Assembly: GCA_002269645.1 (NCBI GenBank)
Contig: NIVC01002018.1
Span: forward strand, 1-64,000
Length of the DNA: 64,000 bases
DNA from: Macrostomum lignano
Taxonomy: Eukaryota
Reading direction: 5' to 3'
This document shows positions 1 to 28,422 of this stretch, in pieces; the stretch's first letter is position 1; each line of letters opens with the position of its first letter. The notes below the pieces were generated by a model, which saw nothing but the letters and a program-made list of their open reading frames with translations, made no database searches and was not told the origin of the DNA. Position numbers and translations under genes: made by a program.

Positions 1-3000
1 TCCAGATCGAACTTGCAAAGAGTGCTTCAATCTCGCCGTCAGCGTAACCGCGTCTACAATTTTTTTTTCATAGCGCACAGTGACTTCGCAAAACTTAGCA
101 TCTCTTAAAAAACATCTACAAAAATATCCAGCCATACTTTTAAAAATGTGACCCATATACCAGGCGATCCTTTTACAAAGTTATCTTTTTTTCCAGGTGA
201 TCCTTTTACCAGGTGACCGTTTTACCAGGTGATTCTTGTACCAGGTGACCCTTTTACCGGGTGACCGTTTTCCAGGTGACCGTTTTACCAGGTGATTCTT
301 GTACCAGGTGACCCTTTTACCGGGTGACCGTTTTTCCAGGTGACCGTTTTTCCAGGTGACCGTTTTACCAGGTGACCCTTTTACCAGGTGACCGTTTTAC
401 CAAGCAATCTTTTTACCAGGCGATCCTTTTACCAAGTGACCGTTTTACCAAGTGACCATTTTACCAGGTGACCGTTTTACCAGGTGACCCTTTTACCAGG
501 TGACCGTTTTACCAGGTGACCCTTCTACCAGGTGACCCTTTTACCAGGTGACCCTTTTACCAGGTGACCCTTTTACCAGGTGACCGTTTTACCAGGTGAC
601 CCTTTTACCAGGTGACCCTTCTACCAGGTGACCCTTTTACCAGGTGATCCTTTTACCAGGTGACCCTTTTACCAGGTGACCCTTCTACCAGGTGACCCTT
701 TTACCAGGTGACCCTTTTACCAGGTGACAGTTTTACCAGGTGACAGTTTTACCAGGTGACCCTTTTACTTCTAGTTGGTAGCACTTCTGGGTAAAATTAT
801 ATAGCTCATATATTGAATATAGAGTTTGCTCACTGTTTCAGCTCGGCCCTCCACTCCTCAAAGTCCAGCTGCTTGTCATTGTTGAGATCGGCCGATTGAA
901 TGGCCTTCTGAATGTCGACAATCTTGTCGCGACGCAAATTCAATTTCGACAGCATCCGACTGGCCCTCTGCTTGAAATAGTCGGTCATTTCGAATTCGTT
1001 CTGCTGCATTGACAGGTCAGACTTCACCTGGCTGTAGGTGTCGTTGATGATGGCCAGGAACATGTTGATCAGCACGAAGAAGACGAAGAACACATACAGG
1101 ATGAAGAAGATCGGTCCCAGTACGCGATTGGCAGTTTGCAGCGAGTTGAAATCGAAGTCGCCCAAGATGATGCGGAACAGGGTGAACACCGACTGCTGGA
1201 ACTCGCGGAAGTCTTTCACCTGGGTGCCGAAGATCAGGTAGCCCAGCTGGGCGAAGGCGAAGAACACAATGAAAAACATGATAGCAAAGCCCATCAGATC
1301 CTTGGCGCAGGCGCCCAGAGTGGAGCTAAGCTGCGTCATGGTCTTGTTGAAGCTGATGTACTTGAAGATCTTCACCCAGGCGAAGAACACCGTGATGGCA
1401 ATGCCGTGGTTGAACTGCTGCTGCCAGTAGGACAGGAAGTCAAAGTCAGGAAAGTTATTCTCGTCTTGCAGCAGGATGGTGAGCTTCTGGCCCACCGCGA
1501 CGGTCCGGTAGACGTTAAACGCAGCACAAACAGTGCTGATGACAATGACAAGGATGTCCAGACAGTTCCAGAAGCAGCGGAAGTAGCGCCACTTGTGCTT
1601 CTTGATCTCGAGGGCCTCCTCAACAATGTAGTAAAGGATGAAGAGCATGAAGACGCACTCGCAGGCTAAGATGAAGTAGTCCATGGGCTCAACGTAGCGC
1701 AGCAGCTTGACGGTACGCAGATCCCAGGTGGGTAGACAGCCACCTGTACATTAAATGCGACAGAGCACAGTTTGTATGATCAAACCGAGTGATATTGGCG
1801 TAGATGAATTGCTGTTTCTCTATTTGGAAGCCGAATCGTTTGTTAAGGACATTCTGCAGTATTTTTGCTAAACTCGCCTACGCTAGGGGTTCGGAAAAGT
1901 CCGGCCCGCAAAGCCTCTCCGGCCCGCAAAGCCTCTCCGGCCGCAAAGCCTCTCCGGCCCGCAAAGCCTCTCCGGCCCGCAAAGCCTCTCCGGCCCGCAA
2001 AGCCTCTCCGGCCCGCAAAGCCTCTCCGGCCCGCAAAGCCTCTCCGGCCCGCAAAGCCTCTCCGGCCCGCAAAGCCTCTCCGGCCCGCAAAGCCTCTCCG
2101 GCCCGCAAAGCCTCTCCGGCCCGCAAAGCCTCTCCGGCCCGCAAAGCCTCTCCGGCCCTCAGATCCTTTAAAGCTTCACAATCGCAATCCGGCGCGCTGG
2201 AGGTTTGTGTCTCTTCTCATCTCCACTCGCCTCCTCTTCTCTCCTCTCTCCTGTCGTCTCTCCTCTCCTCTTCTCTCATCTCCTCTCTCCTCTCCTCCCC
2301 TCTCTCCTATATCTTCTCCTCTCCTCTCCCCTCTCATCTCCTCTCCTCTCTTCTTTCCTCTCCTCTCCTCCCCTCTCTCCTATTTCTTCTCCTCTCCTCT
2401 CTCCTTTCCTCTCCTCTCCTCTCCTCTCCTCTCCTCTCTTTTTTCCTCTCCTCTCCTCTCCTCTCCTCTCCTCTCTCCTTTCCTCTCCTCTCCTCTCCTC
2501 TCCTCTCCTCTCTCCTTTCCTCTCCTCTCCTCTCCTCTCCTCTCCTCTCTCCTTTCCTCTCCGCTCCTCTCCTCTCCTCTCCTCTCTCCTTTCCTCTCCT
2601 CTCCTCTCTCTCCTCTCCTCTCCTCTCTCCTTTCCTCTCCTCTCCTCTCCTCTCCTCTCCTCTCTCCTTTCCTCTCCTCTCCTCTCCTCTCCTCTCTCTC
2701 TCCTTTCCTCTCCGCTCCTCTCCTCTCCTCACTCCTCTCTCCTCTCCTCTTCTATCTGATCCTTTTTCCTCTCCTCTCTAGACTCCTCTCCTTTCCTTTC
2801 CTTTCCTCTCTCTCTTTCCTCTTCCTCCTTTCCTTCCTCCTCTCCTTTCCTTTTACCTCGACTCTCATCTCTTATCTCTCATCTCTATGCTTACTTTTCT
2901 CTCTCCTCCTCCGGCCTCAGATAAAAAAGTTTTCAGACCTCTTGGTTTACACAGAAGATCCACATTTGCGATTTCTAGAGATTTTTTATTAATCCCCCTG

Positions 3001-5261
3001 TTAGGAAGCCCCTTAGTGAAGCATGGTCAATGAAGGATTTTATTCCCTGTCAGGTCTAAGCAACAATTTTTGCGTCGTTTGCCCTCTCTCCCTGGGAAAC
3101 AATCAGCTCACCCGTAGCCATGAACTCCGTGACCAGCCGGATGACGCAGAACAAGTTGATGTTGGCATTGTAGAGCGTGAAGTCGATGAAGACGGCCCTG
3201 GTGCCGCGGTTCACCCACAGCTTGTTGTAGAGCTCCTTGAGAATGGCCTGCGTCGTGGCCTTGTCTCGGGATAGTTCAACAGCGAAGCCGCCGCCGTCGT
3301 AGGACGAAATTTCGGCGTTGTGCGACCGGCCGTCGAGCTGCTCCTCGCTGCGGTACTGCCAGGCTGTGCTGTTGCCGAGGCCGAAGCTGCTTTTGTCGGT
3401 GACGCCGTAGCTGTACTTGGCGTAGCAGGTGGAGATTTTGCCCTGAAAGTAGGACGCGATGTTGCAGGACTGGTTGCTGACTCGAAGCTGACGGAGGCGT
3501 GGAACTCCGAGCAATTTGTTCTCGTAGTAGATGAAGTTCTTCTCGCGCGGATCCGAGAAATTGGCGCTGTTGTACCAGGTGTCCCAATACAGGCCGTTCA
3601 TCAGCGGGCCGTTCACGAACTGCGGTTGTTAAATTACGAGCTACATTTGAACTACTTTTCGGCTATGTACTCGAACAAATACGAAAGACCGAATCTTAGA
3701 CATAATTTTTTGCTTTCTCGACGCAAAATAAAAAGGACGTTTTACATCAGATGTCGGCAGGCAAAACTTTTTTAGAAGAACCTATCGCATGACTGCGGAC
3801 CAGAGGAGGGGAGAAATGAGAGAGATAAGCAACAGAGAGATGAGAGGCGAGAGGCGATGTGAAAAGAGAGGAGGGGAGAGAAGGGAGAGGAGAGGAGAAG
3901 AGACAGGAGACAGGAGAAAGGAGAGAGGAGAGAGAGAGAGAGAGCGAGGAGAGGAGAGAGAAGAGAGGAGAGAGAAGAGAGGAGAGAGAAGAGAGGAGAG
4001 GAGACGAGAGAGGAGAGAGGAGAGAGGAGAGGGAAGAGAGGAGAGAGGAGAGAGGTGAGAGGAGAGGGAAGAGAGGAGAGAGGAGAGAGGAGAGAGGAGA
4101 GGAAGAGAGGAGAGAGGAGAGAGGAGAGAGGAGAGGGAAGAGAGGAGAGAGGAGAGAGGAGAGAGGAGAGGGAAGAGAGGAGAGAGGAGAGAGGTGAGAG
4201 GAGAGGGAAGAGAGGAGAGAGGAGAGAGGTGAGAGGAGAGGGAAGAGAGGAGAGAGGAGAGAGAGAGACGAGAGGAGAGGAGGCGAAGGGAGCTGAGAAG
4301 ACACGAACCTTGAGCGGGCCGGATTGCTATTGTGAGTTCCAAAGGACGCCATGGCCGGATAGAGAGGCTTCGCGGGCCGCATATGGCCCACGGTCCGGAG
4401 TCTGCCAACCCCATGCAGTTGTACATGTATAGATTTTGTCTTCAAAAATTTCGGCAAGTATTAAAATGTTCTTTCAAAAAAGGTCAAAGAAAACCAAACC
4501 AAACAGAATTCGGAAGGACGTTCCATCAATTATCACCAAAAAGGCGATCTAGTTTTACTGCCACAATGCCGATAAAAATTGATTCTGAAGCAACCCGGAA
4601 AGACTCACGCTCCACCAGTCGCCCATATTTCCAACGCTGCGATAATTGTTAGTGGTGTTTTCAATTTTGGTATCCAGAAAGAGGTCGCTCAGCACCTTCG
4701 TGTAATAGTACATTGTGCTGCTGGTCATCCCGAAGGTAACTGCAATTAGCGGTAGCGTTAAAATGAAAGCTGTAGTGTCACAGGGACTCTTTTAACTAAC
4801 GGTAATAAAACTTACTGATCATGAGCACAATGATGAAGATGCAATAGATGATTAGCTCCCGCAGAGTGGTCTTGATGTACAGCTCTCGGTCCTCTTTAGT
4901 GTCCTGCGTGTCTCGAGTTCGCCATATCGCTGCAAAATTTTTAGAGGGGGGGACAGAGCATAAAATATTTAATTTTAATAGAGCCGCCATACATGCTAAA
5001 TTTGATTTACAAGCCCCACTCACACTGTAGGCCGTGCTTGCAGGACTTCAGGCAGCCGCAGCCGCTCTTGCCATCGCCGTCGCCGTCTTTGCCATCGGCG
5101 TCGAGCTGACGATGCCCTCCGGCGCTTTGGCCTCGAACGGCGATCGGTTCGGTGTCCAAGACGTTCGGGTTCTCGAGTCCAGTCTCCCAGGCCTGCATCG
5201 TGCTCGATCGGCCGGTAGACGGCCTCGACATTGGTGGCTCGTTTGCTTGGGCAGTCGCCAT
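1..5261 (-). CDS. PKD2: Polycystin-2 (TRPP2/PKD2-family) cation channel, 3'-partial, multi-exon
   Basis: Exons reconstructed with GT-AG sites and consistent phases: 5261-5024, 4929-4816, 4739-4609, 3619-3112, 1743-834, 53-<1. Motifs: [73 protein letters not shown], pore [30 protein letters not shown]-hand [12 protein letters not shown]. Start at [10 protein letters not shown] (5261) is inferred. PKD2 versus PKD2L1 cannot be resolved by eye. Confidence 0.93.
193..767. repeat. 16-bp minisatellite (CCAGGTGACC[C/G]TTTTA)n in PKD2 intron
   Basis: Direct reading of tandem units between exons 834-1743 and 1-53. Confidence 0.95.
1884..2944 (+). mobile_element. Charlie-like hAT MITE copy with internal 18-bp tandem expansion (CCGGCCCGCAAAGCCTCT)n and CT-rich tract
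   Basis: Begins TAGGGGTTCGGAAAAG, ends TTTTCAGACCTCTTG (imperfect inverted match). Core GGCCCGCAAAGCCTCT...CTTCACAAT.GCAATCCGG...AGGTTTGTGTCT is shared with copies at 3748-4415, about 25490-25900, about 38600-38817 and about 39440-39700. 18-bp array about 1900-2157, CT tract about 2205-2900. Confidence 0.6.
3748..4415 (-). mobile_element. Second copy of the Charlie-like MITE family (reverse orientation, GA-rich tract)
   Basis: Ends CAGATGTCGGCAG and CTGCCAACCCCATG. 4290-4400 is the reverse complement of the core seen at 2140-2215. GA-rich tract 3800-4290. No clean TSD found. Confidence 0.55.
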
Positions 5262-6411: not shown

Positions 6412-8030
6412 TGGGCGCCCGTCTCTTGGTGGGCGCCCCCTGTCTCTTGGTGAGCGCCCCTGTCTCTTGGTGGTGGCCCCCTGTCAATTGGTGGGTGCCC
6501 CTGTCCCTTGGTAAGCGCCCCTGTCTCTTGATGGGCGCCCCCTGTCAATTGGTGGGCGCCCCTGTCTCTTGATGCGCGCCCCTGTCAATTGATGGGTGCC
6601 CCTGTCTCTTGATGGGCGCCCTTTCTCTTGATGGGCGCCCCCTGTCAATTGGTGGGTGCCCCTGTCTCTTGGTGGGCGCCCCTGTCTCTTGGTGGGCGCC
6701 CTTTCTCTTGATGGGCGCCCCCTGTCAATTGGTGGGTGCCCCCGTCTCTTGGTGGGCGCCCCCTGTCTCTTGGTAAGCGCCCCTGTCTCTTGGTGGTGGC
6801 CCCCTGTCAATTGGTGGGTGCCCCTGTCCCTTGGTAAGCGCCCCTGTCTCTTGATGGGCGCCCCCTGTCAATTGGTGGGCGCCCCTGTCTCTTGATGCGC
6901 GCCCCTGTCAATTGATGGGTGCCCCTGTCTCTTGATGGGCACCCCCTGTCAATTGATAGGCGCCCTTGTCTCTTGGTAGGCGCCCCTGTCTCTTGGTGGG
7001 CGCCCCTGTCTCTTGGTGGGCGCCCCTGTCTCTTGGTAGGCGCCCTTGTCTCTTGGTGGGCGCCCCTGTCTCTTGGTAGGCGCCCTTGTCTCTTGGTGGG
7101 CGCCCCCTGTCAATTGGTGGGTGCCCCCTGTCCCTTGGTAAGCGCCCCTGTCTCTTGGTAAGCGCCCCTGTCTCTTGATGGGCGCCCCTGTCAATTGGTG
7201 GGTGCCCCCTGTCCCTTGGTAAGCGCCCCTGTCTTTTGGTAAGCGCCCCTGTCTCTTGGTAGGCGCCCCTGTCTCTTGGTAGGCGCCCCTGTCTCTTGGT
7301 AGGCGCCCCTGTCTCTTGGTAGGCGGCCCTGTCTCTTGGTAAGGGCCCTTTCTCTTGATGGGCGCCCCCTGTCAATTGGTAAGCGCCCCTGTCTCTTGAT
7401 GGGCGCCCCCTGTCAATTGGTAAGCGCCCCTGTCTCTTGATGGGCGCCCCCTGTCAATTGGTGGGCGCCCTTGTCTCTTGGTAAGCGCCCCTGTCTCTTG
7501 GTAAGCGCCCCTGTCTCTTGGTAGGCGCCCCTGTCTCTTGGTAAGGGCCCTTTCTCTTGATGGGCGCCCCCTGTCAATTGGTGGGCGCCCCTGTCTCTTA
7601 ATGCGCGCCCCTGTCAATTGGTGGGTGCCCCTGTCTCTTGATGGGCGCCCCCTGTCAATTGGTGGGCGCCCCTGTCTCTTGGTGGGCGCCCTTGTCTCTT
7701 GGTAGACGCCCCTGTCTCTTGGTAAGGGCCCTTTCTCTTGATGGGCGCCCCCTGTCAATTGGTAAGCGCCCCTGTCTCTTGATGGGCGCCCCCTGTCAAT
7801 TGGTAAGCGCCCCTGTCTCTTGATGGGCGCCCCCTGTCAATTGGTGGGCGCCCTTGTCTCTTGGTGGGCGCCCCTGTCTCTTGGTAAGCGCCCCTGTCTC
7901 TTGGTGGGCGCCCTTGTCTCTTGGTAGACGCCCCTGTCTCTTGGTAAGGGCCCTTTCTCTTGATGGGCGCCCCCTGTCAATTGGTGGACGCCTTTGTCTC
8001 TTGGTGAGTAGTCCTTGGGTGGGCACCCCT
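6412..8030. repeat. 20-21-bp minisatellite (GGGCGCCCCTGTCTCTTGGT and variants with CAATTG)
   Basis: Direct reading; accounts for all ORFs in 6484-8168. Confidence 0.95.
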
Positions 8031-9377: not shown

Positions 9378-12300
9378 TCAATTTTCGCCAATAAGAGCCA
9401 GCAAAATTTTGCAGTAATCCCCGCTTGTATCGTCCTTGATCCACTGGGCCAAACTCTGGCCGAATTCTTTCTGGAAGGCGTCCTTGATCTGCACCATGTC
9501 CACCTCGCAGCGGCTGATAATAATGCGCAGGAGGGTGCGGTCGTCCGTGCCTGTGGGTTCCAGTGAGATCGGCTGTGCACCCTGCATCAATCCAGACTCC
9601 CTGCATCAATCCAGGCACCCTACACCAATCCAGGCACCCTGCATCAATCCAGGCACCCTACATCAATCTAGGCACCCTACATCAATCCAGGCACCCTACA
9701 TCAATACAGGCACCCTGCGTCAATCCAGACTCCCTGCATCAATCCAGGCACCCTGCGTCAATCCAGACTCCCTGCATCAATCCAGGCACCCTGCGTCAAT
9801 CCAGACTCCCTGCATCAATCCAGGCACCCTGCGTCAATCCAGACTCCCTACATCAATCTAGGCACCCTACATCAATCCAGACTCCCTGCATCAATCCAGG
9901 CACCCTGCGTCAATCCAGACTCCCTGCATCAATCCAGGCACCCTGCGTCAATCCAGACTCCCTACATCAATCTAGGCACCCTACATCAATCCAGACTCCC
10001 TGCATCAATCCAGGCACCCTGCGTCAATCCAGACTCCCTGCATCAATCCAGGCACCCTACACCAATCCAGGCACCCTGCATCAATCCAGGCACCCTACAT
10101 CAATCTAGGCACCCTACATCAATCCAGGCACCCTACATCAATCCAGACTTCCTACATCAATCCAGGCACCCTACATCAATCTAGGCACCCTACATCAATC
10201 CAGACTCCCTGCATCAATCCAGGCACCCTACATCAATCCAGGCGCCCTAAATCAATCCAGACTCCCCTGCATCAATCCAGGCACCCTACATCAATCCAGG
10301 CACCCTACATCAATCCAGACTTCCTGCATCAATCCAGGCACCCTACATCAATCCAGGCGCCCTAAATCAATCCAGACTCCCTGCATCAATCCAGGCACCC
10401 TACATCAATCCAGGCACCCTACATCAATCCAGACTTCCTGCATCAATCCAGGCACCCTACATCAATCCAGGCGCCCTAAATCAATCCAGACTCCCTGCAT
10501 CAATCCAGGCACCCTACATCAATCCAGGCACCCTACATCAATCCAGACTCCCTGCATCAATCCAGACACCCTGCGTCAATCCAGGCACCCTGAATCAATC
10601 CAGGCACTCTACATCAATCCAGACTCCCTGCATCAATTCATGCACCCTGCATCAATACAGGTACACAAAAGTACCAATCTAGGCACTTGGTACTGATATC
10701 CAGGCACTCACCCAGTCCTTTCATGGACTTTTGCAGCGCCTTGGCAAAGTAGGCTGGCTTATTCTGCACGCATCTGATGAGAGTCAGCATCGCTTTGAGC
10801 AGGTCGCCCGACATCTCCGACTTCAAGGAATCCTCCAGCGTCTTGCCAGTGAGGCTCTCGTACTCGGCGAACACCGCCCGCAGGTGGGCATTGTTGTTGC
10901 CGCAGAGGATCTCATTAAATTTGCTCTCGTCGGTGCCCCACTTGCCAATGCCGGCCTCCTGCAGGGCCTGGGCGTCCTTCTTGGCCTGCACGGGGTCGAA
11001 GGAGCTGCCCTCGGGCCGGGCGCCAGTCAGCAGCGACACCAGAATGCGCTTGAAGTGGCCGGAGGTCTCCGACATCACGTCCTCCTCGAGGTCGCGATTG
11101 TACACTGCAAAGAGACGGAAGTTGACCGATCAGTTGTCAATCGAGACTAAGACCTGATCACTTCGACACCTAAAATACATCGCGTACGAAGAACAAAATA
11201 AAGCAGTGCGCTCACTGTTGTGGTAGATTTTCTTCACCTCCTGCACCTGGGCTTGGGTTCTGGTGCAGATGACCTCGATCAGGCAGTCCTCGTCCGTGCC
11301 GAGGCCTTTCATAGCCGCGCGCAGCTCCATAGCGTCGTACTCGGCCGCGCCCAGGCACAAGTTCTGGCAGATTTTGTTGAAGTTGCCGCTCAACTCGCTA
11401 TCCAAATCAGCTTTGAGATCCTTGCCGTACTTCATCTTGAAGGCGCGGACAATCTCCTGACGCTGAGAGACGGTCCGATGGCCCAGAACATTGATGATGC
11501 TCTCCTCGTTGGTGCCGAGGCCTTTCATGGCCTTACGCAGCTGCTCAGCGTCGGCGTTGGCGTTGAAGCTGTCGTAGGGCTTCAGCGTGCCCTCCTGGAC
11601 GTACTCCTCCTGCTGGAAGTAGGCCTCGTCCACTGGCTCGGGCGGCTGCTCCTCCGGCGCCTTCAACTTGATGGCGTCGGCCTTCTCGTGACTGGTCTGC
11701 TTGACCTCCGTCTCCATCTTGTGATTCGGCGGGGGCGTCGGGTTCCTGCGCCTCGGCGGCGGCGGAGTCGGCGCCTTCTTGGCTGGCGGCTGTTTCGGCT
11801 TCGGCGGCGGCTGCACCTTCGGCTCGCTCAACGGCTTCTTGTAGCCCGGCTTACCGATCTGCACCGTCAGCAGGTAGGAGTCGGTGGACTCGTCCAGCTC
11901 AGCTGAAATCACCTGCGTCAGGTCGGGTAGTCAGTCGGAGGAAGGGCGTGGTGAAAAAAACAACTTAAAAGCGTTGAAATGTGACTCCAGGACTCCAGGG
12001 TTGAAATGTGACCAGCACAAAATGGAATTCATAGGCAAAATGATCCCACTAGTACCAGTATGAAAATGTGGCATCAACCTGAAGTTCCTTTAACTCCAAG
12101 ATAAACTTCAACGAAGTTTTAAAAGCTTTCCACAAATGCTGGGTGTAAATAATTGGTCTGAGGCTAAAACGTTCCAACCTTTCCAAATTTTGGCCCGCCA
12201 ACGGCCGCCTGAAAGTCGCCATCGGAGCGAGCGTACTGGAGCAGGTGAGCGTAGACGTGCTGCAGCTGCTTCTTGAAGTCGCCGTCTCCTTTGCTGACGG

Positions 12301-14377
12301 GCAGGCAGGCTGGGTCAGCTGACACGGGCTGCTGCGGAGGCTGCGGAGGCTGCTGCTTCTTTTTGTCTTCAACCAGCCGGCGAATGTCCTGCAGCGTGCT
12401 CTGTCGAGTTTCGTCCATGCGTTGGCTCAGCTGAGCAGCGATAAGGTTGAGCTGCTGCGGCGTCACTCCCTGCGGCGTGGCAGATTAGATTATCATAATC
12501 ATAATTATTTCCCTAAATATTACAGGGAAATACAGCTGGTATTTACACAGCTCGGAGCTCTCCTAGATGCCATTGATTTTGTCTTTTGAATTAAAAACAC
12601 CTGTGTAACAGTGCAAAGATGATTCTTACCTGATCCGGAGCAGGCAGCGCCGGCTGCGGCTGTTGCTGTTGCACCTGCGGTGCGAAGCCGCCCCTGAAGT
12701 TGACATTGTTCGGCGTGCGCACCTCCCAGCCCATCAAGCCGCCGGCTGGGCCGCCGAAGCCGCCACCGCCTGTTCCGGCGCCTGGTGGCCCGCCGCCGTA
12801 CAGATTGATCTGCGTGCCGGAGTGATTGACCGCGGCGAAGCCCTGATCTGGCGGGATGCCCAGCTCGTCCAGCGGCGACGGCTCGGCAGGCTTAGGAGGA
12901 GCGGCTTTGTCCCAGGCTCGGCGTCTGGAGCCGCCACCAGAGGCGCCTTTGCGGGTGCGCAGGCCGTCCTCAAGGTCGCTGTCCCAGCTGCGGGGTAGGG
13001 AAGTTCGAATGCTGGTGAGGAATCAGATAGCGCTTGTTGAAGTCTGTCTGGAGGTGACACTCCTGTCTAACAGGTGACACTCCTGTCTAACAAGTGACAC
13101 TCCTGTCTAACAGGTGACACTCCTGTCTAACAGGTGACACTCCTGTCTAACAAGTGACACTCCTGTCTAACAAGTGACACTCCTGTCTAACAGGTGACAC
13201 TCCTGTCTAACAGGTGACACTCCTGTCTAACAGGTGACACTCCTGTCTAACAGGTGACACTCCTGTCTAACAAGTGACACTCCTGTCTAACAGGTGACAC
13301 TCCTGTCTAACAAGTGACACTCCTGTCTAACAGGTGACACCCTGTCTAACAGGTGACACTCCTGTCTAACAAGTGACACTCCTGTCTAACAGGTGACACT
13401 CCTGTCTAACAAGTGACACTCCTGTCTAACAGGTGACACTCCTGTCTAACATGTGACACTCCTGTCTAACAGGTGACACTCCTGTCTAACAAGTGACACT
13501 CCTGTCTAACAGGTGACACTCCTGTCTAACAAGTGACACTCCTGTCTAACAGGTGACACTTCTGTCTAACAGGTGACACTCCTGTCTAACAAGTGACACT
13601 CCTGTCTAACAGGTGACACCCTGTCTAACAGGTGACACTCCTGTCTAACAAGTGACACTCCTGTCTAACAGGTGACACTCCTGTCTAACAAGTGACACTC
13701 CTGTCTAACAGGTGACACTCCTGTCTAACAAGTGACACTCCTGTCTAACAGGTGACACTCCTGTCTAACAGGTGACACTCCTGTCTAACAGGTGACACTC
13801 TTATCCAATACAGACACTCCGATCAGGATGGCACTAATATCTAACAGGTTCCACCTTTGTCCATTAGGTGACAACAACTCTTACAGTCGCTCTCACTTAC
13901 GCAGTAGAATCCGTGGTGACGCTGCAGTCGTCATAGCAGTCGTCGGTCTCATTCCAACCGTGTATATCCTCACAGTGGTAGGTTCTCGTCGTCACTGCGC
14001 TTAATTGCCGGGTAACCCGGTGCATAGCAACCGCCTTGACAACCCGCTTGCCAGGCTTCAAACAGAATGGGGCCCGATATTTAAACGTGACCTCGCGTCC
14101 ATTGACTTTTCGCTGTTCCGGATTGGGTCGAGTTCCGTCCGTATTAAAGAAGATGTGGCAGTTTGAGGAGTCTGCGCGAAAGGCAATATTGCTGAGTATT
14201 TAATGTTATTTTTTAACGCAAGTTTCTAAATAAGCCGTTCAATTTCAAAATCAAATGAGACCCACCGCACGCCATCTCAATATACGTAGCTGAATCAATG
14301 CAGTGAGCTGGTTTTCCAGACACTGGGCCTTTCAGTGCAGTTAGCACTGGTGCAGCAATACCACCTGCAGGCGGCAT
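9378..14377 (-). CDS. Annexin with long N-terminal extension containing a DZANK1-N-terminus-like (Fn3-associated/CHB_HEX_C-type) domain; 764 aa, 7 exons
   Basis: Exons 14377-14266, 14171-13901, 12987-12630, 12469-12179, 11912-11216, 11104-10712, 9550-9378. All junctions GT-AG and in phase; total 2295 nt = 765 codons. Four annexin repeats with MKGLGT/KWGTDE loops and acidic caps (SELSG, SETSG, SEMSG, DDTSG). The annexin core is certain; the N-terminal domain call is from motif memory. Confidence 0.88.
9580..10650. repeat. 19-bp minisatellite (CATCAATCCAGGCACCCT[A/G])n in last annexin intron
   Basis: Direct reading; a 19-aa periodicity in the spurious ORFs equals 3 x 19 nt. Confidence 0.95.
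13064..13800. repeat. 20-bp minisatellite (CTCCTGTCTAACA[G/A]GTGACA)n in annexin intron 2
   Basis: Direct reading; near-perfect units with G/A alternation. Confidence 0.95.
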
Positions 14378-17300
14378 CTGAAAATTATGAAATGATTCAT
14401 ACTAGTTTTAAAGTAATTTCGCAAACTAGTTGAGTTTCAAAAAACTAATAAAAAATAATTTTGGATAAAGTAACACACATTTTTGTATGTCTCTCAGATC
14501 TTAGACAAAATTACTTAGACAGACGAAAAGGTTTTTAATTTTTTTATTATAAATCAATTAAATTCAGTTAACAACTTTGAATTGTAATTTTAACTTTACA
14601 GTTATAAAAGTTGATTTACAAAAGAGTCTAAACATCATTCAACATAAGATGTATATAGTATGCATATGCATCATTTTCAACAAAAAGTTTCCAAACTTTA
14701 CTAAAAAGTAGCCAATTATATTTAAAAACTATTCAAATACATGACCAGTATTCATTGTTATAGATACTTGACCATTATAATGTTAATATATATGATATGA
14801 CTTTTCATAAAGAAAACAAATAAAAATTATATTTTTCAGATGAAATCTGTAAATAACAATCCCAATGCATGTCTTATTTGTCTACTAGACCACACTATTA
14901 TTGATAAGGAACAAAATAGAATTAATTAGCTAGCTAATCGATTCTAAATACATCATTAGTAAATAAATCATTATGATATGGCATGTTGTTTGGCAGCGAT
15001 GAGCGAAGCGAGTTAGCTGGCTTAATTCTGATATTAAATCAATGCATCCATAACGCTTCCTTGTAGGTCCTACTTGTACATATTTTTCACAAAAAGCGAG
15101 CTGTTGTCGCTGGGCAAACATTTTGATATTTTTAGTTAAGTTGCCATGTTATGGAGTGTTAGTCATATAGTAACTTAAAGGGCATTTGCTTTTAAACGTG
15201 TTTATAATGCTTTGTCCAACTGTTATAGATAGGTCTCTCGTTTCTACAAAAATAATATATGTTATTAAAGCAATCTTGAACTAAGCGCTACATAAACGGT
15301 GTTGAATGTTACTATGATACAGTTAAGTAACAGTAATTTACTTTTTGTATGCTTTTAAAGAATAATACTAGTTAGAAAGAAGTACGATGCAAATATTTAA
15401 CGCTGCCTTAATCTAAAGAAATTAAGCTTATTAAACTGTTTCGTTATAGTTTTCCTACGTAATAAGCTTAAAACTGTAAAATATCGAATACAATAAGAGG
15501 AGAATATGTTTGTGTCTTTGTGTCTCTATGTTTGTATCTTATTGTGACACAAAAAGATAAAGAAGTGTACAATAAGTTACACAAGTTACAGAAGTTACAC
15601 AATAAGTGTTTCTCTATTTAAAGAAAGCACTAAAAAGCAAAACAAAGACTTCAATTTCATAATGTTTGTAATTTCACAACCACGGCCTGGCATGTTAAGA
15701 ACCGATCATCCAATTCTTAGGATGCGACGGCTCCGACTGGGTTTTGGAGCCATGGGTCGAGCGTGACTTTTCTCGCCTGTATTATTAGTCCCAGGGACTT
15801 AAGTAGTCCTAGCGTGGTACAACAGGATGTAAAACTTAATTATCGTGTATAAGGCCAATCCTGGAAAAATGCACTGCGGAAATAGAAAATATTCTTTCTT
15901 TCTTCTTATATAGAAAGGATATTATCTCTTCATCACATATTTAGTGATTACATTAAATTGCGACCCCGCCGCGCTAAGGGTCATAAAACTCGGTAACTTA
16001 ATGTGAATGAACATTCGACACTGCATGTGATGGGTTTCGACCTTCCGCCCCCCTTGTGGGGAAGCCTTCGGGCCTCAGGTCTCAGAAATAAATCAATTAG
16101 AGTCCTGCCCCCCCCCCCTCCTGTCAGATGGTCAGCCCCATGGTAGCTTGATCGTGTGGCGAGCAGTCTAGGTCCTATGGCTAAGAGAGGAACAGTGAGA
16201 GACAAGCAGGGAGAATTTTGAAGGTAGAAATTAGTTAATCCGCAGATTAGCCAACTCGCTGCCACCAGCCCGTACGTCCTGGCTCACCACACCGGGACTC
16301 TCGAAATCGGGCTTCCGACTAGAAGGGGCTTTGCCCTTACTTGCCAACTAGTGTCTTTTTGCGGTCAATCTCGAAGTCATAGCCGATGTTAAGGGACACT
16401 GCTGGGACTAGATCGCATTGGCCATGCAGGTACAGAGGGGACTTGTGCAGGGGATTCTTGCAGTGGCGAGACTATGGGGTAGCTACATGTACTATTACAT
16501 AGCTAAATACGAAGATATGTACTTTTGGCCTTCAACGCGCCAACCAGCCTCTCCTAGCGCTGATGATAGGCTAACTCGAACTTCAGAGACCGCATGATTC
16601 GATCATTACCCGAGCCGCTCGGCGAACCTAGAGTGCACAGAGTACATCTCTGGCGCCGATTCTGCACTACTGGCTGTTTTGCTCACTGATTTGATAGATT
16701 GATCGACAGTTTCTTGCCTTGCCATTGGTCCACTGTGACCGGCACCTACTAGCTTAGCTACTCATCTGAGCCATCGGCGAACAAATAAATAAAACCGATA
16801 AAAATAACTGTCAGATTTAACCTTCTCCTCAGATCACTTCACACTTCAGATTGAATTGGAGTTTTAGACTAATAGCAGTATTATTGAATGACTTCTGCCT
16901 CGATTACAGCACTACTGAACAAAATGAGCAAAAGTGTGCGCCTAATCCAGCTACTGAAACAGGGGACAGATAAGGAATCACCCAATCAAGCAAGTCTAGG
17001 TAGCCTCTCACCCAACGAATCAGAAACTCAACAGCCAGCACGCGAAGGTGTATTCAGCACACCAGTGAAGTATGAGACAGACCAGGCCTATGGGCTACGG
17101 TCTGCGATGCTTCACGCCTGCCCCTATCTTCAGCAGGTCAAGGCTGGAGAGGGAGGTCTGCACCCGCTATTTGCCGCTGGCAGCCGCAGACCCCCCCTCG
17201 CGCTGTTTCACAAGTCGACCCAGGGTACTCGTCCCCGCGTGTGTTCAAGGCAGACCTTAGGGCTGCTGGACAGACTGGGCTCCGACGCTGGCGACCCATC

Positions 17301-17507
17301 CAGTGGCTTCGGCCGAACTTGGGTATGCGGGTCTGGCTTGCCAGCCTGCAGGCCGTGGTACTGCTTAACGTACCCCCTAATGCCTAAGGTGTTTGACCGT
17401 GCCGATGGGCTGGAAGGCCGGGGGGTTGTCCGGTTGCTAGCGGTCCTTTTCTTTTTCTTCTTTCCTCTTTCTTTTGTGACTCAGCTCACTCCTTCCCGCT
17501 TTCAGCT

Positions 17508-18933
17508 ATGGCGTCATCCGCCTCTTTCAACCCCGCTGAAGCCGGGGCCCCGGCAACTCCGGCCGGTGACTCTGGCACCAGCGCCGCCCCACCGGGGGCA
17601 GATGGGCCCTCCGCTGAAGCCCGACGCACCCGCAACCAACGCCGCAACGAGCGGCGACGGCGACTACGGGGTACTGCGGGCCGGCCACCGGCGGAGGGGG
17701 AACCTAGGGAGGGCGAGGCTGCTGTTGGGCCGAAAGGAACCACAGCAACCCCTGCCCCCCCCCCAGGATAAAACCCCCGCTGGTGAGCCACCCAGTATAC
17801 CTGCTACAAGCGCGGCCGGGCCTTCGGGAACCGCCGCCACCAACTACGCCTCAAAGGTCAAGCTCCAACCGGCGGTCATCTTCTTCGGGGAAGAGCAGGA
17901 CCTCACGGCCGACGAGCTCGACAGTGCCTGGCGTACCATCGATGCTGCGCTCATCGACCAGCTCCTGGCGGGCCGCCCTGTGAGCGTGGTCAAGTCTGCC
18001 AAGACCGACGGCTGCATTTTCATCTGGTGCAGCTCGGAGGAGAGCAGCCGCAATCTACGCGAGCTTCTGCCAAAGCTGAACTGGCCCAAGAAGCTCGGCA
18101 AGCTCGTCTTCGCCAGCGAGGGCGAACGACAAAAGACCCAGCGCTTTCGCGTCTGGATCCCGGCCGGCAGTGCCATTAAGTCCGGAGATCAGCTTAGGCA
18201 AATATTGCTAAAGCTGCACCCCGACCTTGAGGTCAACGGGCTCCTACACCACGCCACTTCCCGCAAGGAGAAGGGGGCTACGGTGATCCTAGGGCTCTCT
18301 GATGACTGGGCTAAGCGCTTGCCGCCTAAGTCCACAATTCATATTGGTCTGACTCAGCTGACCATCCTCCGTTGCGAGGAGCGGAAAGCTGATGAAGCCA
18401 AGAATGCCAAGGCTTCCGAAACCGGAACTGGGGCCCAGGCTCCTCCGGCAAAGAAGCCGAGGCAAACGGCCGATCCTATGCCCGGCAAGGCAGTTCGCGC
18501 TGCTGAAACCGGAAATCGCAATCGCAGACCCGCCAGGAGCACCCGGAGGTCCGGCCTGATCTAGCGCGCGCTGGACCAGGCCAAGAGCCTTCGTGCGCAT
18601 CGTGAGCGGGCCCGCGCTTCTCGCGCTCCACCCCAACAGCCAGAAGGCCAGGCTCTAAGCGGGGAGGCTCCGGCCGACTGGTTCGAGTCTGTGACTCACC
18701 AGGAGACTGGCGCCACCCGCATCGACCTGACCGACGAGGCAGAGGGGACGGGCAGTGACAGCACCGAAGCACGCAGGGGAGGCGACGGTAACGTCCACGC
18801 TGGGCTCACGTCCGCGGAGGACTCCACAGCCACCCTAACTGCTGAGGACGCTGAAACTCCCATGGAGGTCTGCGGGTCACCCACCACTGAAAAGGAGGAG
18901 GATGACCTGCTCAACGATTCCCCAACTGCGTGA
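17508..18933 (+). pseudogene. ORF1 (gag-like) of the LOA-type element, with one frameshift and one nonsense codon
   Basis: Starts MASSASFNP. A 1-nt change in the C10 run 17755-17764 joins it to the frame with AVIFFGEE..FRVWIP..TVILGLS..IHIGLTQL (resembles DUF4780-type LOA ORF1). TAG at 18562-18564 is followed in frame by 18565-18933, ending in an acidic tail. Confidence 0.7.
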
Positions 18934-18935
18934 TA

Positions 18936-21900
18936 ATGATCAGCAACCAGGGAATCCATTGCCTGCAGATTAATCTGCAGCACTGCGTCGCAGCCTCGGT
19001 CAACCTTATGCGTTACGCCGAGCTCGACAAGCCGGGGCTCATCCTCGTCCAGGAACCCTGGACTCTCAGAGGTAAGCCTCAAAACGCCCCTGCTGGCTAC
19101 AATTGTTTTTATACTTACCCTCGCGAGGCCAACCAGCCTCCCAGAGCTTGCATCTTTGCGAGCAAAACGCTCAGTGCGTGGCTCAGATCGGACCTGTCCA
19201 ACAGGGACATCTGCGTCATCCAATCCGAGGACCTTCTTCCTGGGAAGACCACCCTCATTGCCTCGGTTTACCTACCAGGCGATGCTGCGGTCGTCCCCAG
19301 AGCCCTCGCTACGCTGGTAGAGCTCTGCTCTGCCAAAAACTACGAGCTAATGGTTGCCGGCGACATCAACGCCCACCACACTCACTGGGGCAGCACTGGC
19401 ATTAATCAGAGAGGCGAAGACCTCCTAGCCTACGTTGCCTCTACGACCCTCGAGTTCTGCAACTCTGGGTCCACCCCTACCTTTGACAACGGACGGTGGT
19501 CGGAGGTGATCGACGCCACGCTCGCAACGCCCAGACTCTACCAGAGTATTGGGGCGTGGCGGGTGCTTCCAGTGTCCTCACTCTCGGATCACAAGTTCAT
19601 CTCCTTCAACCTAATGGCCGCGCGTAGCGCAACTCGTGTTACGTGGAGACGGAACGCCAGAAATACTGATTGGGAAACCTTCGGGCTCGCCCTGAAGGAA
19701 TTCCATCGGTCTCCTGGCCAACCATCCACGATCACGTCGTGCCGAGAGGCGGATGAGTGCGCGACTGTTTTGACAGAGACGCCAACCGCCGCCTTTGAGG
19801 CGTCCTGCCCTTTGAAAGCCTATAAAGGGAAAAAATCGGCGCCGTGGTGGAATCCCGAGCTCGGCAACCTCCGTCGCAGGGCTAAGAGACTCCACCGCAG
19901 AGCAACTAAAACTAAGAGCCCTGCGGACCAAACCGCCTATCATGAAGCAATCCATGAGTTTAAAAGGCAGGTTAGGAATGCAAAGGCTCAAAAATGGCGA
20001 CAATACTGTGAGGAGCTAGAGGGCTCACGCCCCACCTCCAGAGTTGTGAAAGCGCTCACGCTGGACAAAATGTCTAAGCTCTCCTCGGTCAAACGCACCG
20101 ACGGTACGTCCACGGACAACCCAGGGGAAACGCTTGATGTAATGCTCAATGCGTTTTTCCCCAACGAGCCAGCTAACCAGACCACTCCGGATCACTCGGA
20201 GGGAGGTCACGGCTGGCTGCCTCTATCATCACGGAAGACCGCATCGTGAGAGCGGCAAATTCCTTCAAGCCTTTCAAAGCCCCAGGACCCGACGGCATTG
20301 TACCGGCCCTCCTAAGAAAGGCGGTTAAATGCCAGGCTTCCTGCGCAAACTTTGCAGCCTTCTTCGGGCATGCATCACGCTTGGTTATGTCCCACAGGCA
20401 TGGATCGAGGCAAAGGTGATCTTTATCCCTAAGCCAGGCCGCCCGGACTACCATTCTATCAAATCCTTCAGACCGATCAGCTTGACCTCCTCCCTGGTCA
20501 AGCTGATGGAGAGACTGGTGCTTTGGCGCCTTCTCTCTGTTGAGCTGAAGAACAAACCTCTCAGCGAGAACCAGCACGCTTTTCGGGCGGGTCGCTCCAC
20601 TGAAAGCGCGCTGCACGTCCTGGTCGATAAACTCGAGAAGGCCGTGCTTGGTAATGGCTTTGCTCTGGGGATCTTCCTGGACATCATTGGCGCCTTCGAT
20701 AACGTCCTCTTTGAGGCGTTCCGAAGAGCTCTTTGTGAGAGGCAAACGCACTCACATCTCACCAGATGGATCATGTACATGATCAGCCATCGCACGGCCA
20801 CCGCTAGTCTGCTGGGCTACCAGAGGACGGTCCCCGTCTGCAAAGGTAGCCCGCAAGGTGGGGTGCTGTCTCCAGTTCTCTGGAATATGGTCATCGATGA
20901 GCTCCTCCGGGATGTTCGGCCTGACCCCATTCTGAAAGTTGGATATACGAACGATGTCACCGCGGTGGCATCTGGTCCGTCCCCTGATACCCTCAGGGAC
21001 CTTCTTCAGAACTTTATCTACGCCGCTGAGCAATGGGCGGACCGCTGTGGTTTAAGGCTCTCTGAGATTAAGACCGCAGCGATCATGTTCACCAGCAGGA
21101 CCAAGTGGCAGATTCGGCCGCTCACGCTTTACGGAAGGGAAATCCCCTTCTGCAAGCAGACTAAATGTCTGGGTATTACCCTGGACCATAGGCTGAACTG
21201 GTCACCCCACGTTCAAACAAAAGCCAAAAAGGCCTTCGCAGTCCTCGCGCAATTGCGCAGGGCTGTCGGCACCACCTGGGGGCTCACCCCCAAGCGCCTC
21301 TGGTGGATCTACACTGCAATGGTTAGGCCCGCTATCTCGTATGGCGGCCTGATCTGGGCTAGCGCCCTGCAGATAAAGACCTGTCTAGAGGCTCTCAGGA
21401 GAGCGCAAGGGCGCGCATGTCGCACGATCATGAGCGCCCCTCCGTCTGCTCCTTACGATGGCCTCAACGCCTTCCTCAACATTCCTCCGCTGGACATCTT
21501 TGTCCGCAGGGAAGCGGCTAAGACTGCCCGCCGTCTAGCTGACGCTGGCATTCGAATCCAGCCCCATAGGGCCATGGCTAAGCGCAAGCTTCTGCCCCAC
21601 GCTGACCTCTGCCTCAAGGACTTGAGAGACAGCGGCGGGCTCCACGTCCTATCTGACGGCGAACCCCGCACTCTCAACCTCTTTCAGCGCTACAAGGTCA
21701 CCATCCCCTCTAGGGATGCTGCCAATGACCACTGGAATTTCCAGGAGGTCCATTGCTACACGGACGGATCCATCAAAGACGGTCGCGCCGGCTTTGGGGT
21801 CTGCATCATCATCAACGGCCGCGTAATTGCCACGCATGCCCAGCACACTGGTAGACTCTCCACAGTCTTACAGAACGAAGTCCTTGCCATCAGCTCTTGC

Positions 21901-28300: not shown

Positions 28301-28422
28301 TTGGCTGCATCCATGAATTTCGGAAGCACTGTCGCGAGGTCAACGAGCCGAGAAGGCCAGTACCGCCCAGCATCCCGATCGACTTCCCGAGCATAACACC
28401 TCGGTATGGAGCTGTGGTATGA
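25394..28422 (+). CDS. Otopetrin-like proton channel, copy 1 (intact, 596 aa, 2 exons)
   Basis: Exon 1 25394-25435 (MAACNRQSSHESDQ|GTAAT), exon 2 26674-28422 (cttcgcag|GAA). Multi-TM protein with otopetrin hallmarks ATNVSLW, FPFLIEF, and C-terminal PLQVFFRFHS. Confidence 0.82.
26000..26546 (-). mobile_element. 5'-truncated RTE-like non-LTR retrotransposon in otopetrin copy 1 intron
   Basis: 13-bp TSD TAGGTTTGAACTA at 25987-25999 and 26547-26559. (TTCTA)3 tail at the element's 3' end. Residual ORF KIKLFRATVEPILLYGLE...LAGHVLR is typical of the post-RT C-terminal region. Absent from the copy 2 intron. Confidence 0.8.

What the first reader, a model, noticed from the sequence alone, without database searches (positions are those of the whole stretch)
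9378..14377. Annexin fused to a DZANK1-type N-terminal domain: a chimeric 764-aa membrane/cilium adaptor candidate
Two exons absent from the ORF track (14377-14266, 14171-13901) splice in phase to the annexin. They encode MPPAGGIAAPVLTALKGPVSGKPAHCIDSATYIEMACDSSNCHIFFNTDGTRPNPEQRKVNGREVTFKYRAPFCLKPGKRVVKAVAMHRVTRQLSAVTTRTYHC. This aligns by eye along its whole length with the N-terminus of the ciliary trafficking protein DZANK1 (..IYYTLDGSKP..TFKY..PITL..G...VKAIA..). DZANK1 has zinc ribbons and ankyrins downstream; here there is a Gly/Pro/Gln linker, a helical segment and a complete four-repeat annexin core with all four type II Ca2+ sites. Annexin N-termini are usually short or simply low-complexity, and I do not recall this architecture being characterised. 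It could couple a DZANK1-like interaction module to Ca2+-dependent phospholipid binding.
Basis: partly seen in the sequence, partly recalled or inferred. Interest (0 to 1): 0.82.

Follow-up and report, generated by a model that had tools for sequence, protein, structure and literature searches.

The report
Annexin fused to a DZANK1-like half
This flatworm (Macrostomum lignano) gene really does join the front half of a DZANK1-like cilium-base protein to a complete calcium- and membrane-binding annexin, and the combination is an old, unstudied gene family found in many invertebrate phyla rather than a one-off chimera.

Summary
Seven GT-AG exons on the minus strand (14377-9378) give an uninterrupted 764-aa protein. 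It is identical to the public Macrostomum lignano model BOX15_Mlig011209g4.

Two modules match DZANK1:
- the N-terminal beta-sandwich, aa 4-105 (hhalign E 1e-45);
- a central helix/hairpin module, aa ~306-366 (E 2.8e-22).

Between them, in a disordered stretch, lies a near-invariant motif, NHSGTQINLYG. It resembles the conserved TQTVGLF (LC8-type TQT) motif of DZANK1.

The zinc ribbons and ankyrin repeats are absent. A canonical four-repeat annexin core follows. One exon (11912-11216) encodes both the end of the DZANK1-like module and annexin repeats 1-2, so the fusion is physical.

The architecture recurs in trematodes, cestodes, a monogenean, a nemertean, a brachiopod, snails and a priapulid. 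These form a 95% bootstrap clade. Starfish and an acorn worm have an ankyrin-plus-annexin version. Macrostomum, Schistosoma, Tubulanus and Priapulus also keep a canonical DZANK1, so this gene is an ancient paralogue.

I found no paper that describes it. The proposed function is inferred, not shown: an LC8-dimerised, microtubule- or cilium-base-associated, Ca2+-dependent membrane tether.

The parts
14266..14377 (-). Exon 1 (ATG at 14377; aa 1-37, phase-1 donor). An acceptor-like ttttcag lies directly before the ATG.
   Evidence: orthologues align across this exon junction without a gap
13901..14171 (-). Exon 2 (aa 38-127): the rest of the DZANK1-type N-terminal beta-sandwich plus an acidic, Cys-rich tail
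13960..14365 (-). Coding span of the N-terminal Fn3_assoc/DZANK1-type domain (aa 5-108; includes intron 1)
   Evidence: Pfam Fn3_assoc 27.3 bits; DZANK1 aa 3-103 aligned; hhalign E 1e-45; AF2 beta-sandwich with pLDDT 80-93
12630..12987 (-). Exon 3 (aa 128-247): a disordered Gly/Pro/Gln-rich region holding the conserved motifs
12795..12848 (-). Conserved linear motif DQGFAAVNHSGTQINLYG (aa 175-192), a candidate LC8/DYNLL-binding TQT-type anchor (TQI)
   Evidence: Invariant or near-invariant columns D175 F178 N182 S184 G185 T186 Q187 N189 G192 in 13 sequences from 5 phyla. Priapulus has NYNGTQVNIFG. Canonical DZANK1s carry TQTVGLF upstream of the same central module. The region is predicted disordered.
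12179..12469 (-). Exon 4 (aa 248-344): a long helix (aa 251-284) and the first part of the DZANK1 central module
11847..12295 (-). Coding span of the second DZANK1-homologous module (aa 306-366; two helices plus a beta-hairpin; includes intron 4)
   Evidence: phmmer to DZANK1 aa 448-521; hhalign E 2.8e-22; AF2 secondary structure
11216..11912 (-). Exon 5 (aa 345-576). This single exon carries the end of the DZANK1-like module, the Pro/Lys-rich linker and annexin repeats 1-2. It is the physical fusion point.
   Evidence: Uninterrupted ORF 11130-11912
10712..11104 (-). Exon 6 (aa 577-707): end of annexin repeat 2, repeat 3 and start of repeat 4
9378..9550 (-). Exon 7 (aa 708-764 plus TGA): annexin repeat 4
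9381..11588 (-). Coding span of the four-repeat annexin core (aa 453-764; includes introns 5 and 6)
   Evidence: Pfam Annexin x4, E 4e-96; annexin A4 338 bits; Foldseek TM 0.94-0.96, rmsd 1.6-2.0 A to annexin A4/A11; Ca2+ site residues

Best explanation
What it is (shown): an intact protein-coding gene of Macrostomum lignano for a 764-aa protein. It belongs to an ancient invertebrate paralogue family of DZANK1.

The family keeps three DZANK1 features:
- the N-terminal Ig-like (Fn3_assoc-type) domain;
- a near-invariant GTQ[IV]N short motif in a disordered stretch;
- the helix plus the central alpha/beta module.

It lacks the double zinc ribbons, which are the NINL-binding part of DZANK1. In place of the ankyrin repeats it carries a canonical Ca2+/phospholipid-binding annexin core.

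How it most likely works (inferred):
1. The GTQI motif recruits an LC8/DYNLL dimer.
2. LC8, the following helix and the central module pair two chains. Mammalian DZANK1 does this as a dimer with an LC8 dimer on the A-tubule of the ciliary transition-zone doublet.
3. The N-terminal half thereby anchors the protein to a microtubule, centriole or cilium-base structure, or to an LC8-containing complex.
4. When Ca2+ rises, the two annexin cores clamp onto acidic phospholipid membrane.

The net effect would be a Ca2+-switchable tether between a microtubule-based scaffold and a membrane (ciliary or periciliary membrane, or vesicles). The ~85-residue Pro/Lys-rich linker would act as a flexible spacer.

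My confidence in the identity and the real fusion is about 0.95. My confidence in the tether mechanism is about 0.4.
For: The gene is real and the fusion is physical:
- All splice sites are canonical and the ORF is open.
- One exon spans both halves.
- An identical public model occupies the same 5-kb span.

Homology to DZANK1 in two separate modules:
- PDB DZANK1, E 2.7e-22 in two stretches.
- hhalign E 1e-45 for the N-domain and E 2.8e-22 for the central module.

Architecture and distribution:
- It is conserved in Schistosoma, Trichobilharzia, Echinostoma, Paragonimus, Anoplocephala, Cichlidogyrus, Lingula, Tubulanus, Bradybaena/Candidula and Priapulus.
- The protostome fused proteins form a clade with 95.5% NJ bootstrap on N-domain plus central module.
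- Canonical DZANK1 coexists in Macrostomum (P0036), Schistosoma (P0046), Tubulanus (P0039) and Priapulus (P0042).

The short motif:
- It is near-invariant inside an otherwise unalignable disordered region.
- Canonical DZANK1s have TQTVGLF ~40 aa upstream of the same module.
- LC8 motifs need Q at position 0 and mid-sized branched residues at -1/+1 within disorder (PMC6607443).

What is known of DZANK1:
- It binds only DYNLL1/2 in pull-downs and binds NINL through its zinc-finger region (PMC4617706).
- A DZANK1 dimer and an LC8 dimer were assigned as MAPs on the transition-zone A-tubule (bioRxiv 10.64898/2026.06.11.731632).

The annexin core:
- Four repeats with intact Ca2+ ligands, 51% identity and TM 0.94-0.96 to annexin A4.
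Against: - There are no expression, localisation or binding data for any member of this family.
- The equivalence of TQI with the DZANK1 TQT motif is not established by alignment. hhalign placed TQT opposite VTPQQL at low confidence. The spacing to the central module also differs: ~120 aa here against ~40 aa in DZANK1.
- TQI or TQV anchors did not occur in the main text of the LC8 motif paper I consulted, and many true TQT peptides do not bind LC8.
- One fused-clade member (P0029, unknown organism) lacks the motif.
- The DZANK1 assignment in the cryo-ET map rests on AlphaFold docking. I could not determine which DZANK1 residues contact tubulin.
- AF2 confidence for the central module is only moderate (pLDDT 55-75).
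- Foldseek found only generic Ig/Fn3-like folds for the N-domain, E >= 0.015.
- Several schistosome annexins are tegument-associated, so a non-ciliary role is possible.
Confidence: 0.5

Rival explanations
1. Dynein-cargo adaptor variant. The protein is a mobile adaptor rather than a static tether. LC8 binding couples it to dynein or dynein-associated complexes, and the annexin core picks up vesicle membranes directly in a Ca2+-dependent way. This would replace the NINL-dependent route used by canonical DZANK1.
For: In zebrafish, DZANK1 and NINL co-function in dynein-driven vesicle and melanosome transport. DZANK1 pulls down DYNLL1/2 (PMC4617706). The NINL-binding zinc-ribbon region is exactly what the fused family lacks. 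The candidate LC8 motif is retained.
Against: LC8 is now viewed mainly as a dimerisation hub rather than a cargo adaptor (PMC6607443). Without NINL or another activating adaptor there is no evident link to the dynein motor. No data exist for this family.
Confidence: 0.2
2. Ordinary cytosolic or tegumental annexin whose long N-terminus is only a regulatory or oligomerising appendage, as in annexin A7/A11. On this reading the DZANK1-derived modules have lost any microtubule, LC8 or cilium connection, and the protein acts in membrane repair, aggregation or secretion.
For: The core is a very standard annexin, closest to A4, A6, A11 and A7. Sources name the orthologues 'annexin A7/11'. The middle is Gly/Pro/Gln-rich like A7/A11 N-termini. 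Flatworm annexins are known from the tegument and from secretions (PMC3795353 abstract).
Against: The N-domain, the motif and the central module are conserved at 35-60% identity between phyla that have been separate since the early protostome radiation. This argues for a specific retained interaction, not a loose low-complexity tail. The low-complexity parts themselves are not conserved.
Confidence: 0.2
3. Annotation artefact: two neighbouring genes (a truncated DZANK1-like gene and an annexin) wrongly joined into one model.
For: No transcript evidence could be examined here. The first exon starts directly after an acceptor-like site. An internal Met (aa 404) in exon 5 could in principle start an annexin-only product.
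Against: Exon 5 is one open reading frame. It contains the last 22 residues of the DZANK1-like module, the linker and annexin repeats 1-2. The same co-linear architecture is modelled independently in more than 10 species from 5-6 phyla, including RefSeq models. A second M. lignano paralogue (P0002) has it too.
Confidence: 0.03
4. Carbohydrate-binding or extracellular role. The N-terminal Fn3_assoc/CHB_HEX_C-type domain acts as a glycan-binding module, as in bacterial glycosidases, on a secreted annexin.
For: Pfam matches to Fn3_assoc and CHB_HEX_C_1, which are families defined largely on bacterial glycoside hydrolases. Foldseek gives weak similarity to Ig/Fn3-like domains of bacterial glycan-sensing proteins.
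Against: By eye I see no N-terminal signal-peptide-like hydrophobic stretch in MPPAGGIAAPVLTALKGPVSGK; no predictor was run. The closest relatives of the domain are intracellular DZANK1 proteins, at E 1e-45. The Foldseek hits are weak (E >= 0.015).
Confidence: 0.05

Closest known systems
[quoted passage not shown] PDB 11xu chain G1. The canonical M. lignano copy is BOX15_Mlig021025g1 (P0036).
   Same: N-terminal Fn3_assoc-type beta-sandwich (34% identity over 112 profile columns, E 1e-45). Central helix/hairpin module (DZANK1 aa 448-521, E 2.8e-22). A T-Q-x short motif in disorder upstream of that module. The order of these elements is the same.
   Different: No double zinc ribbons (the NINL-binding region) and no ankyrin repeats. 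The anchor is TQI/TQV rather than TQT, and it lies ~120 aa rather than ~40 aa upstream of the module. The C-terminus is an annexin core. It is a paralogue, not the orthologue, because a canonical DZANK1 coexists in the same genome.
Annexins with long N-termini (vertebrate annexin A7 and A11; core most similar to A4 and A6)
   Same: Four-repeat core with Ca2+ sites, 51% identity to annexin A4, TM-score 0.94-0.96. A long N-terminal extension that is partly Gly/Pro/Gln-rich.
   Different: From background knowledge, A7 and A11 N-termini are low-complexity (GYP-rich) and unfolded. Here the extension contains two folded, deeply conserved modules homologous to a ciliary/centrosomal protein, plus a conserved linear motif.
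Ambulacrarian DZANK1-like-ankyrin-annexin proteins (Asterias rubens XP_033629438.1, 908 aa; Saccoglossus ANK+annexin; Glandiceps DZANK1-like without DZR)
   Same: N-domain, central module and annexin core in one chain. No zinc ribbons.
   Different: They keep the ankyrin repeats and the canonical IGTQTVGLF motif. They lack the pre-annexin YFETEEYEQEGTLKP motif. Orthology with the protostome clade is unresolved: sister position has only 14% bootstrap, and the annexin cores do not group.
Multi-core annexins (annexin A6 type)
   Same: Some members of the fused family have 2 or 3 annexin cores (Bradybaena 8 repeats; Priapulus 11 repeats detected).
   Different: The M. lignano protein has a single core. 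The duplication in those lineages appears independent of vertebrate A6.

Membership tests
Annexin (Pfam PF00191) | Four ~70-residue annexin repeats forming the core | tested here: met
   4 stretches, E 4.3e-96, 315 bits against a cut-off of 25. Full-length alignment to annexin A4, A6, A5 and A11.
Annexin (Pfam PF00191) | Type II Ca2+ sites: GxGT in the AB loop plus an acidic cap 38 residues downstream | tested here: met
   Repeats 1, 2 and 4: KGLGT...E/E/D at +42 from the first Gly. Repeat 3: GKWGT...E, the usual repeat-3 variant.
Annexin (Pfam PF00191) | Annexin fold (right-handed superhelix of 5-helix repeats) | tested here: met
   AF2 pLDDT 85-95 for aa 450-764. Foldseek TMt 0.94-0.96, rmsd 1.6-2.0 A to annexin A4 and A11.
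Annexin (Pfam PF00191) | Ca2+-dependent binding to acidic phospholipids | not testable with these tools
   Needs a liposome co-sedimentation assay or similar.
DZANK1 family | N-terminal Fn3_assoc-type domain at the extreme N-terminus (MxxAG..P.I.PL..., FKY, VKA.A) | tested here: met
DZANK1 family | Double zinc ribbons (Pfam DZR, CxxC pairs) | tested here: not met
   No DZR or zinc-ribbon Pfam hit. No match with a canonical DZR region by phmmer, whereas most canonical members match.
DZANK1 family | C-terminal ankyrin repeats | tested here: not met
   No Ank hit. The Asterias relative does have them.
DZANK1 family | Central conserved module (SPGRGYWRKQ.DH...H......F...I..P..GK...) | tested here: met
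   phmmer aa 282-353 against DZANK1 aa 448-521; hhalign E 2.8e-22
DZANK1 family | TQTVGLF LC8-type motif upstream of the central module | tested here: inconclusive
   A conserved SGTQINLYG is present, but positional homology is not resolved by hhalign, and the anchor is TQI, not TQT.
DZANK1 family | Binding to DYNLL1/2 and NINL; basal-body or transition-zone localisation | not testable with these tools
   Known for vertebrate DZANK1 only (PMC4617706; bioRxiv 10.64898/2026.06.11.731632).
Protostome 'DZANK-N/annexin' fused clade (unnamed) | Co-linear N-domain, GTQ[IV]N motif, helix, central module, linker with EEY.QEGTLKP, and annexin core(s); no DZR, no ANK | tested here: met
   Alignments A1 and A4; domain map; clade bootstrap 95.5%, flatworm subclade 91%.

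The most novel reading that the evidence does not exclude
The family is a previously unrecognised, ancient bilaterian component that physically links ciliary or centriolar microtubules (through a DZANK1-type, LC8-dimerised module) to the ciliary or periciliary membrane in a Ca2+-dependent manner. It would have been lost in vertebrates, insects and probably most nematodes. That loss would explain why it was never studied. It would give flatworm models a direct handle on Ca2+ control of the attachment between the cilium base and the membrane.
Probability: 0.2. Interest if true: 0.75.

Novelty: new variant of a known kind. Interest (0 to 1): 0.55.

Why it matters
Annexin N-termini determine what each annexin does, and DZANK1 is a poorly understood ciliopathy-linked protein that was recently placed on the transition-zone doublet.

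A deeply conserved natural hybrid of the two says something about both. The N-domain, motif, helix and central module of DZANK1 appear to form a self-contained functional unit that evolution has reused with different C-terminal effectors: ankyrins, annexin, or both. In many invertebrates that unit is wired directly to Ca2+-dependent membrane binding.

The family is absent from the standard vertebrate, fly and worm models. It is present in RNAi-tractable flatworms (Macrostomum, and parasites such as Schistosoma and tapeworms), so the hypothesis is directly testable. The gene may also be relevant to ciliated parasite stages or protonephridia.

It is not a new kind of system. It is a new, uncharacterised domain combination of two known families.

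Tried and rejected
- A word-indexed homologue search with an N-domain profile returned only short fragments and no canonical DZANK1. The exhaustive HMMER search was needed.
- A homologue search with the annexin core was swamped by ordinary annexins and did not help with architecture. It did reveal the Saccoglossus ANK+annexin protein.
- The NJ tree of annexin cores has no deep support. It cannot say whether the ambulacrarian and protostome fusions share one origin.
- The first Biopython tree attempt timed out.
- Foldseek with the N-half model gave only generic Ig/Fn3-like hits. Sequence and profile evidence had to carry that point.
- hhalign did not align TQI with TQT, so I do not claim that equivalence as shown.
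- The intron positions of the canonical M. lignano DZANK1 are not shared with the fused gene's N-domain introns. This gives no extra support for or against paralogy.
- The exon map of the S. bovis orthologue could not be made, because locus L002 was not available to the script. An ORF I tried was unrelated.
- Supplements of the planarian 'dzank1' RNAi paper are not held, so I cannot tell which paralogue was knocked down.
- Literature searches for Mlig011209, annexin+Fn3_assoc and annexin+DZANK1 found nothing relevant.

Full report
**1. Observation**

The minus strand of window 9378-14377 was read. Joined in phase 1 they give exactly the quoted 104-residue peptide.

Five more GT-AG exons follow: 12987-12630, 12469-12179, 11912-11216, 11104-10712 and 9550-9378. 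Together the seven exons form a 2295-nt reading frame of 764 codons plus TGA, with no internal stop.

The product is 100% identical over its full length to the deposited protein BOX15_Mlig011209g4 of Macrostomum lignano. The public assembly (GCA_002269645.1, contig NIVC01002018.1) annotates a 764-aa gene on the same 5000-bp span, next to a polycystin-type channel. So the window comes from this free-living flatworm, and the 'missing' exons are part of an existing model.

**2. What the protein contains**

Pfam finds four annexin repeats (E 4e-96). It also finds an N-terminal Fn3_assoc/CHB_HEX_C_1 match, which is just above threshold in the full protein (23.1 bits against 23) and clearer in isolation (27.3 bits). 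That borderline score explains why databases list this protein only as 'Annexin'.

Searching aa 1-452 against PDB sequences gives one significant hit, DZANK1 (entry 11xu), E 2.7e-22, in two separate stretches:
- aa 4-105 matches DZANK1 3-103;
- aa 282-353 matches DZANK1 448-521.

Profile-profile comparison of an alignment of fused proteins with an alignment of canonical DZANK1s gives E 1e-45 for the N-domain and E 2.8e-22 for the central module.

AlphaFold2 with a 13-sequence alignment predicts:
- a beta-sandwich at aa 5-108 (pLDDT ~80-90);
- disorder at aa 109-250;
- a long helix at aa 251-284;
- two helices plus a beta-hairpin at aa 312-363 (pLDDT 55-75);
- a disordered Pro/Lys-rich linker at aa 366-447;
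- a confident annexin core at aa 450-764.

The annexin core superposes on annexin A4 and A11 with TM 0.94-0.96. Repeats 1, 2 and 4 have GxGT-38-[D/E], and repeat 3 has the customary GKWGT...E form.

**3. The fusion is physical**

Exon 5 (11912-11216) is one open frame (ORF 11130-11912). It starts with the last strands of the DZANK1-like module (VISAELDESTDSYLLTVQIGKP), runs through the linker and ends inside annexin repeat 2.

I found no zinc-ribbon or ankyrin coding sequence in the gene or its flanks.

**4. Relatives**

An exhaustive HMMER search of 1.84 billion representative proteins, using a profile of the non-annexin half, found 389 proteins at E <= 1e-3. Local domain mapping of the listed hits, Pfam and source names sort them into three groups.

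(a) Canonical DZANK1: N-domain, zinc ribbons, TQTVGLF, central module, ankyrins. It occurs from a sponge (Sycon) to mammals, and it includes copies in Macrostomum lignano itself (P0036, 812 aa), Schistosoma bovis, Taenia solium, Tubulanus polymorphus and Priapulus caudatus.

(b) The fused type: N-domain, GTQ[IV]N motif, helix, central module, annexin; no ribbons and no ankyrins. It occurs in:
- two Macrostomum paralogues;
- schistosomes and Trichobilharzia;
- Echinostoma and Paragonimus;
- the tapeworm Anoplocephala;
- the monogenean Cichlidogyrus and the tapeworm Dibothriocephalus (both fragments);
- the brachiopod Lingula;
- the nemertean Tubulanus;
- the snails Bradybaena and Candidula (up to two annexin cores);
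- Priapulus (about three cores).

(c) An ambulacrarian type: N-domain, TQTVGLF, central module, ankyrins, annexin. It is seen in Asterias rubens and A. amurensis, with a Saccoglossus ANK+annexin model and a Glandiceps N-module-ANK protein lacking ribbons.

An NJ tree on N-domain plus central module places all protostome fused proteins in one clade (95.5% of 200 bootstraps), with flatworms as a subclade (91%). The starfish and acorn-worm pair is its weakly supported sister (14%). A tree of annexin cores is unresolved.

Conclusion: the gene is a member of an old paralogue family. The duplication and fusion predate at least the split between Spiralia and Priapulida. Whether the ambulacrarian form represents the ancestral state (ankyrins later lost) or an independent fusion is open.

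**5. A conserved linear motif**

The region between the N-domain and the helix is otherwise disordered and unalignable. Within it, DQGFAA.NHSGTQINL.G is invariant among flatworms. Its core, N-[HY]-[SN]-G-T-Q-[IV]-N-[LVI]-[WYF]-G, is kept in Lingula, Tubulanus, snails and Priapulus.

Canonical DZANK1s have a similarly invariant TQTVGLF[YF] about 40 residues upstream of the central module. Priapulus DZANK1 has three TQT motifs.

TQT within disorder is the anchor of LC8/DYNLL-binding motifs. Positions -1 and +1 prefer mid-sized branched residues, and Gly at -2 occurs in the optimal binder VSRGTQTE (PMC6607443).

DZANK1 pulls down only DYNLL1 and DYNLL2 (PMC4617706). It was modelled as a dimer with an LC8 dimer and an adjoining helix on protofilaments A06-A07 of the transition-zone doublet (bioRxiv 10.64898/2026.06.11.731632).

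The inference that GTQI is an LC8 site is therefore reasonable, but it is not shown. hhalign did not align it with TQT, the spacing differs, and one clade member lacks it.

**6. Mechanism**

Shown:
- an intact annexin core with Ca2+ ligands;
- two DZANK1-type folded modules and a conserved short motif, all under long-term purifying selection;
- absence of the NINL-binding zinc-finger region.

Inferred:
- LC8-assisted dimerisation;
- docking on a microtubule-, centriole- or cilium-base scaffold in the manner of DZANK1;
- Ca2+-triggered attachment of the annexin cores to acidic membrane, through an ~85-residue flexible linker.

Together these steps describe a Ca2+-switchable tether between microtubule and membrane.

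Rivals are a mobile LC8/dynein-linked vesicle adaptor, an ordinary cytosolic or tegumental annexin with a derived N-terminus, a glycan-binding extracellular protein, and an annotation artefact. The last two are poorly supported. By eye I see no signal-peptide-like N-terminal stretch (no predictor was run), the closest relatives are intracellular, and one exon spans the junction.

**7. Comparison with the known, and novelty**

As an annexin, it meets every sequence and fold criterion.

As DZANK1, it meets two defining features (N-domain, central module) and fails two (zinc ribbons, ankyrins). A true DZANK1 orthologue sits elsewhere in the genome. It should therefore not be filed as DZANK1 but as a DZANK1-paralogue/annexin fusion.

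Flatworm annexin surveys (PMC3795353, PMC11195529) do not mention such an N-terminus. No paper in the searchable library links annexin with DZANK1 or Fn3_assoc.

A planarian gene called dzank1 has an RNAi phenotype in dopaminergic neuron regeneration (PMC13594227). I could not determine which paralogue that gene is.

The proteins themselves are already in public databases under generic names. What is new is recognising the family, its extent and its DZANK1 modules. I rate it a new variant of a known kind, with moderate interest (0.55). The mechanism is untested, and the family is absent from vertebrates, which limits immediate reach. It remains a clear, testable lead for cilium-base and annexin biology in flatworms and other invertebrates.

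Noticed in passing
window 13052-13800 and 9577-10661: Two large intronic minisatellites lie inside the gene. One is a 20-bp unit x 37.5 copies (95% matches) in intron 2. The other is a 19-bp unit x 57 copies (85% matches), filling most of intron 6.
   Followed up: partly
window 830-3616 (minus strand): Exons of a polycystin-type (PKD2-like) cation channel lie immediately downstream on the same strand: PKD_channel E 2e-76 and Polycystin_dom E 1e-48. It is annotated as a 651-aa gene in the public assembly. The adjacency of a ciliary-type channel gene to this gene is probably coincidental and was not tested.
   Followed up: partly
window 16888-22638 (plus strand): A non-LTR retrotransposon lies upstream of the gene. 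It has a 558-aa ORF with no Pfam hit, an endonuclease ORF (Exo_endo_phos_2) and a reverse transcriptase plus RNase H ORF, apparently intact.
   Followed up: partly
window 26896-28422 (plus strand): A 508-aa multi-pass membrane ORF with an Otopetrin match (E 2e-13), i.e. a proton-channel family.
   Followed up: no
window 1800-4450 and 6480-7760: Long Ser/Pro/Leu-rich, Arg/Glu-rich and 'TGAPTKRQGRPPRDRG'-type repetitive ORFs occur on both strands. They reflect simple-sequence or minisatellite DNA with strong strand-compositional skew.
   Followed up: no
window 14378-14390: The start codon is directly preceded by an acceptor-like ttttcag. This fits either an upstream 5'-UTR exon or spliced-leader trans-splicing, which from background knowledge occurs in M. 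lignano. Not tested.
   Followed up: no
P0028 (Bradybaena similaris) and P0031 (Priapulus caudatus): Members of the fused family in a snail and a priapulid carry 8 and 11 detected annexin repeats, i.e. two and about three cores. Core multiplication therefore happened inside this family independently of vertebrate annexin A6.
   Followed up: partly
P0203 (Plectus sambesii, 377 aa): A nematode annexin groups with the first core of the Priapulus fused protein at 92% bootstrap. It may be a truncated model or a remnant of the fused gene in a nematode that also has a canonical DZANK1 (P0049).
   Followed up: no
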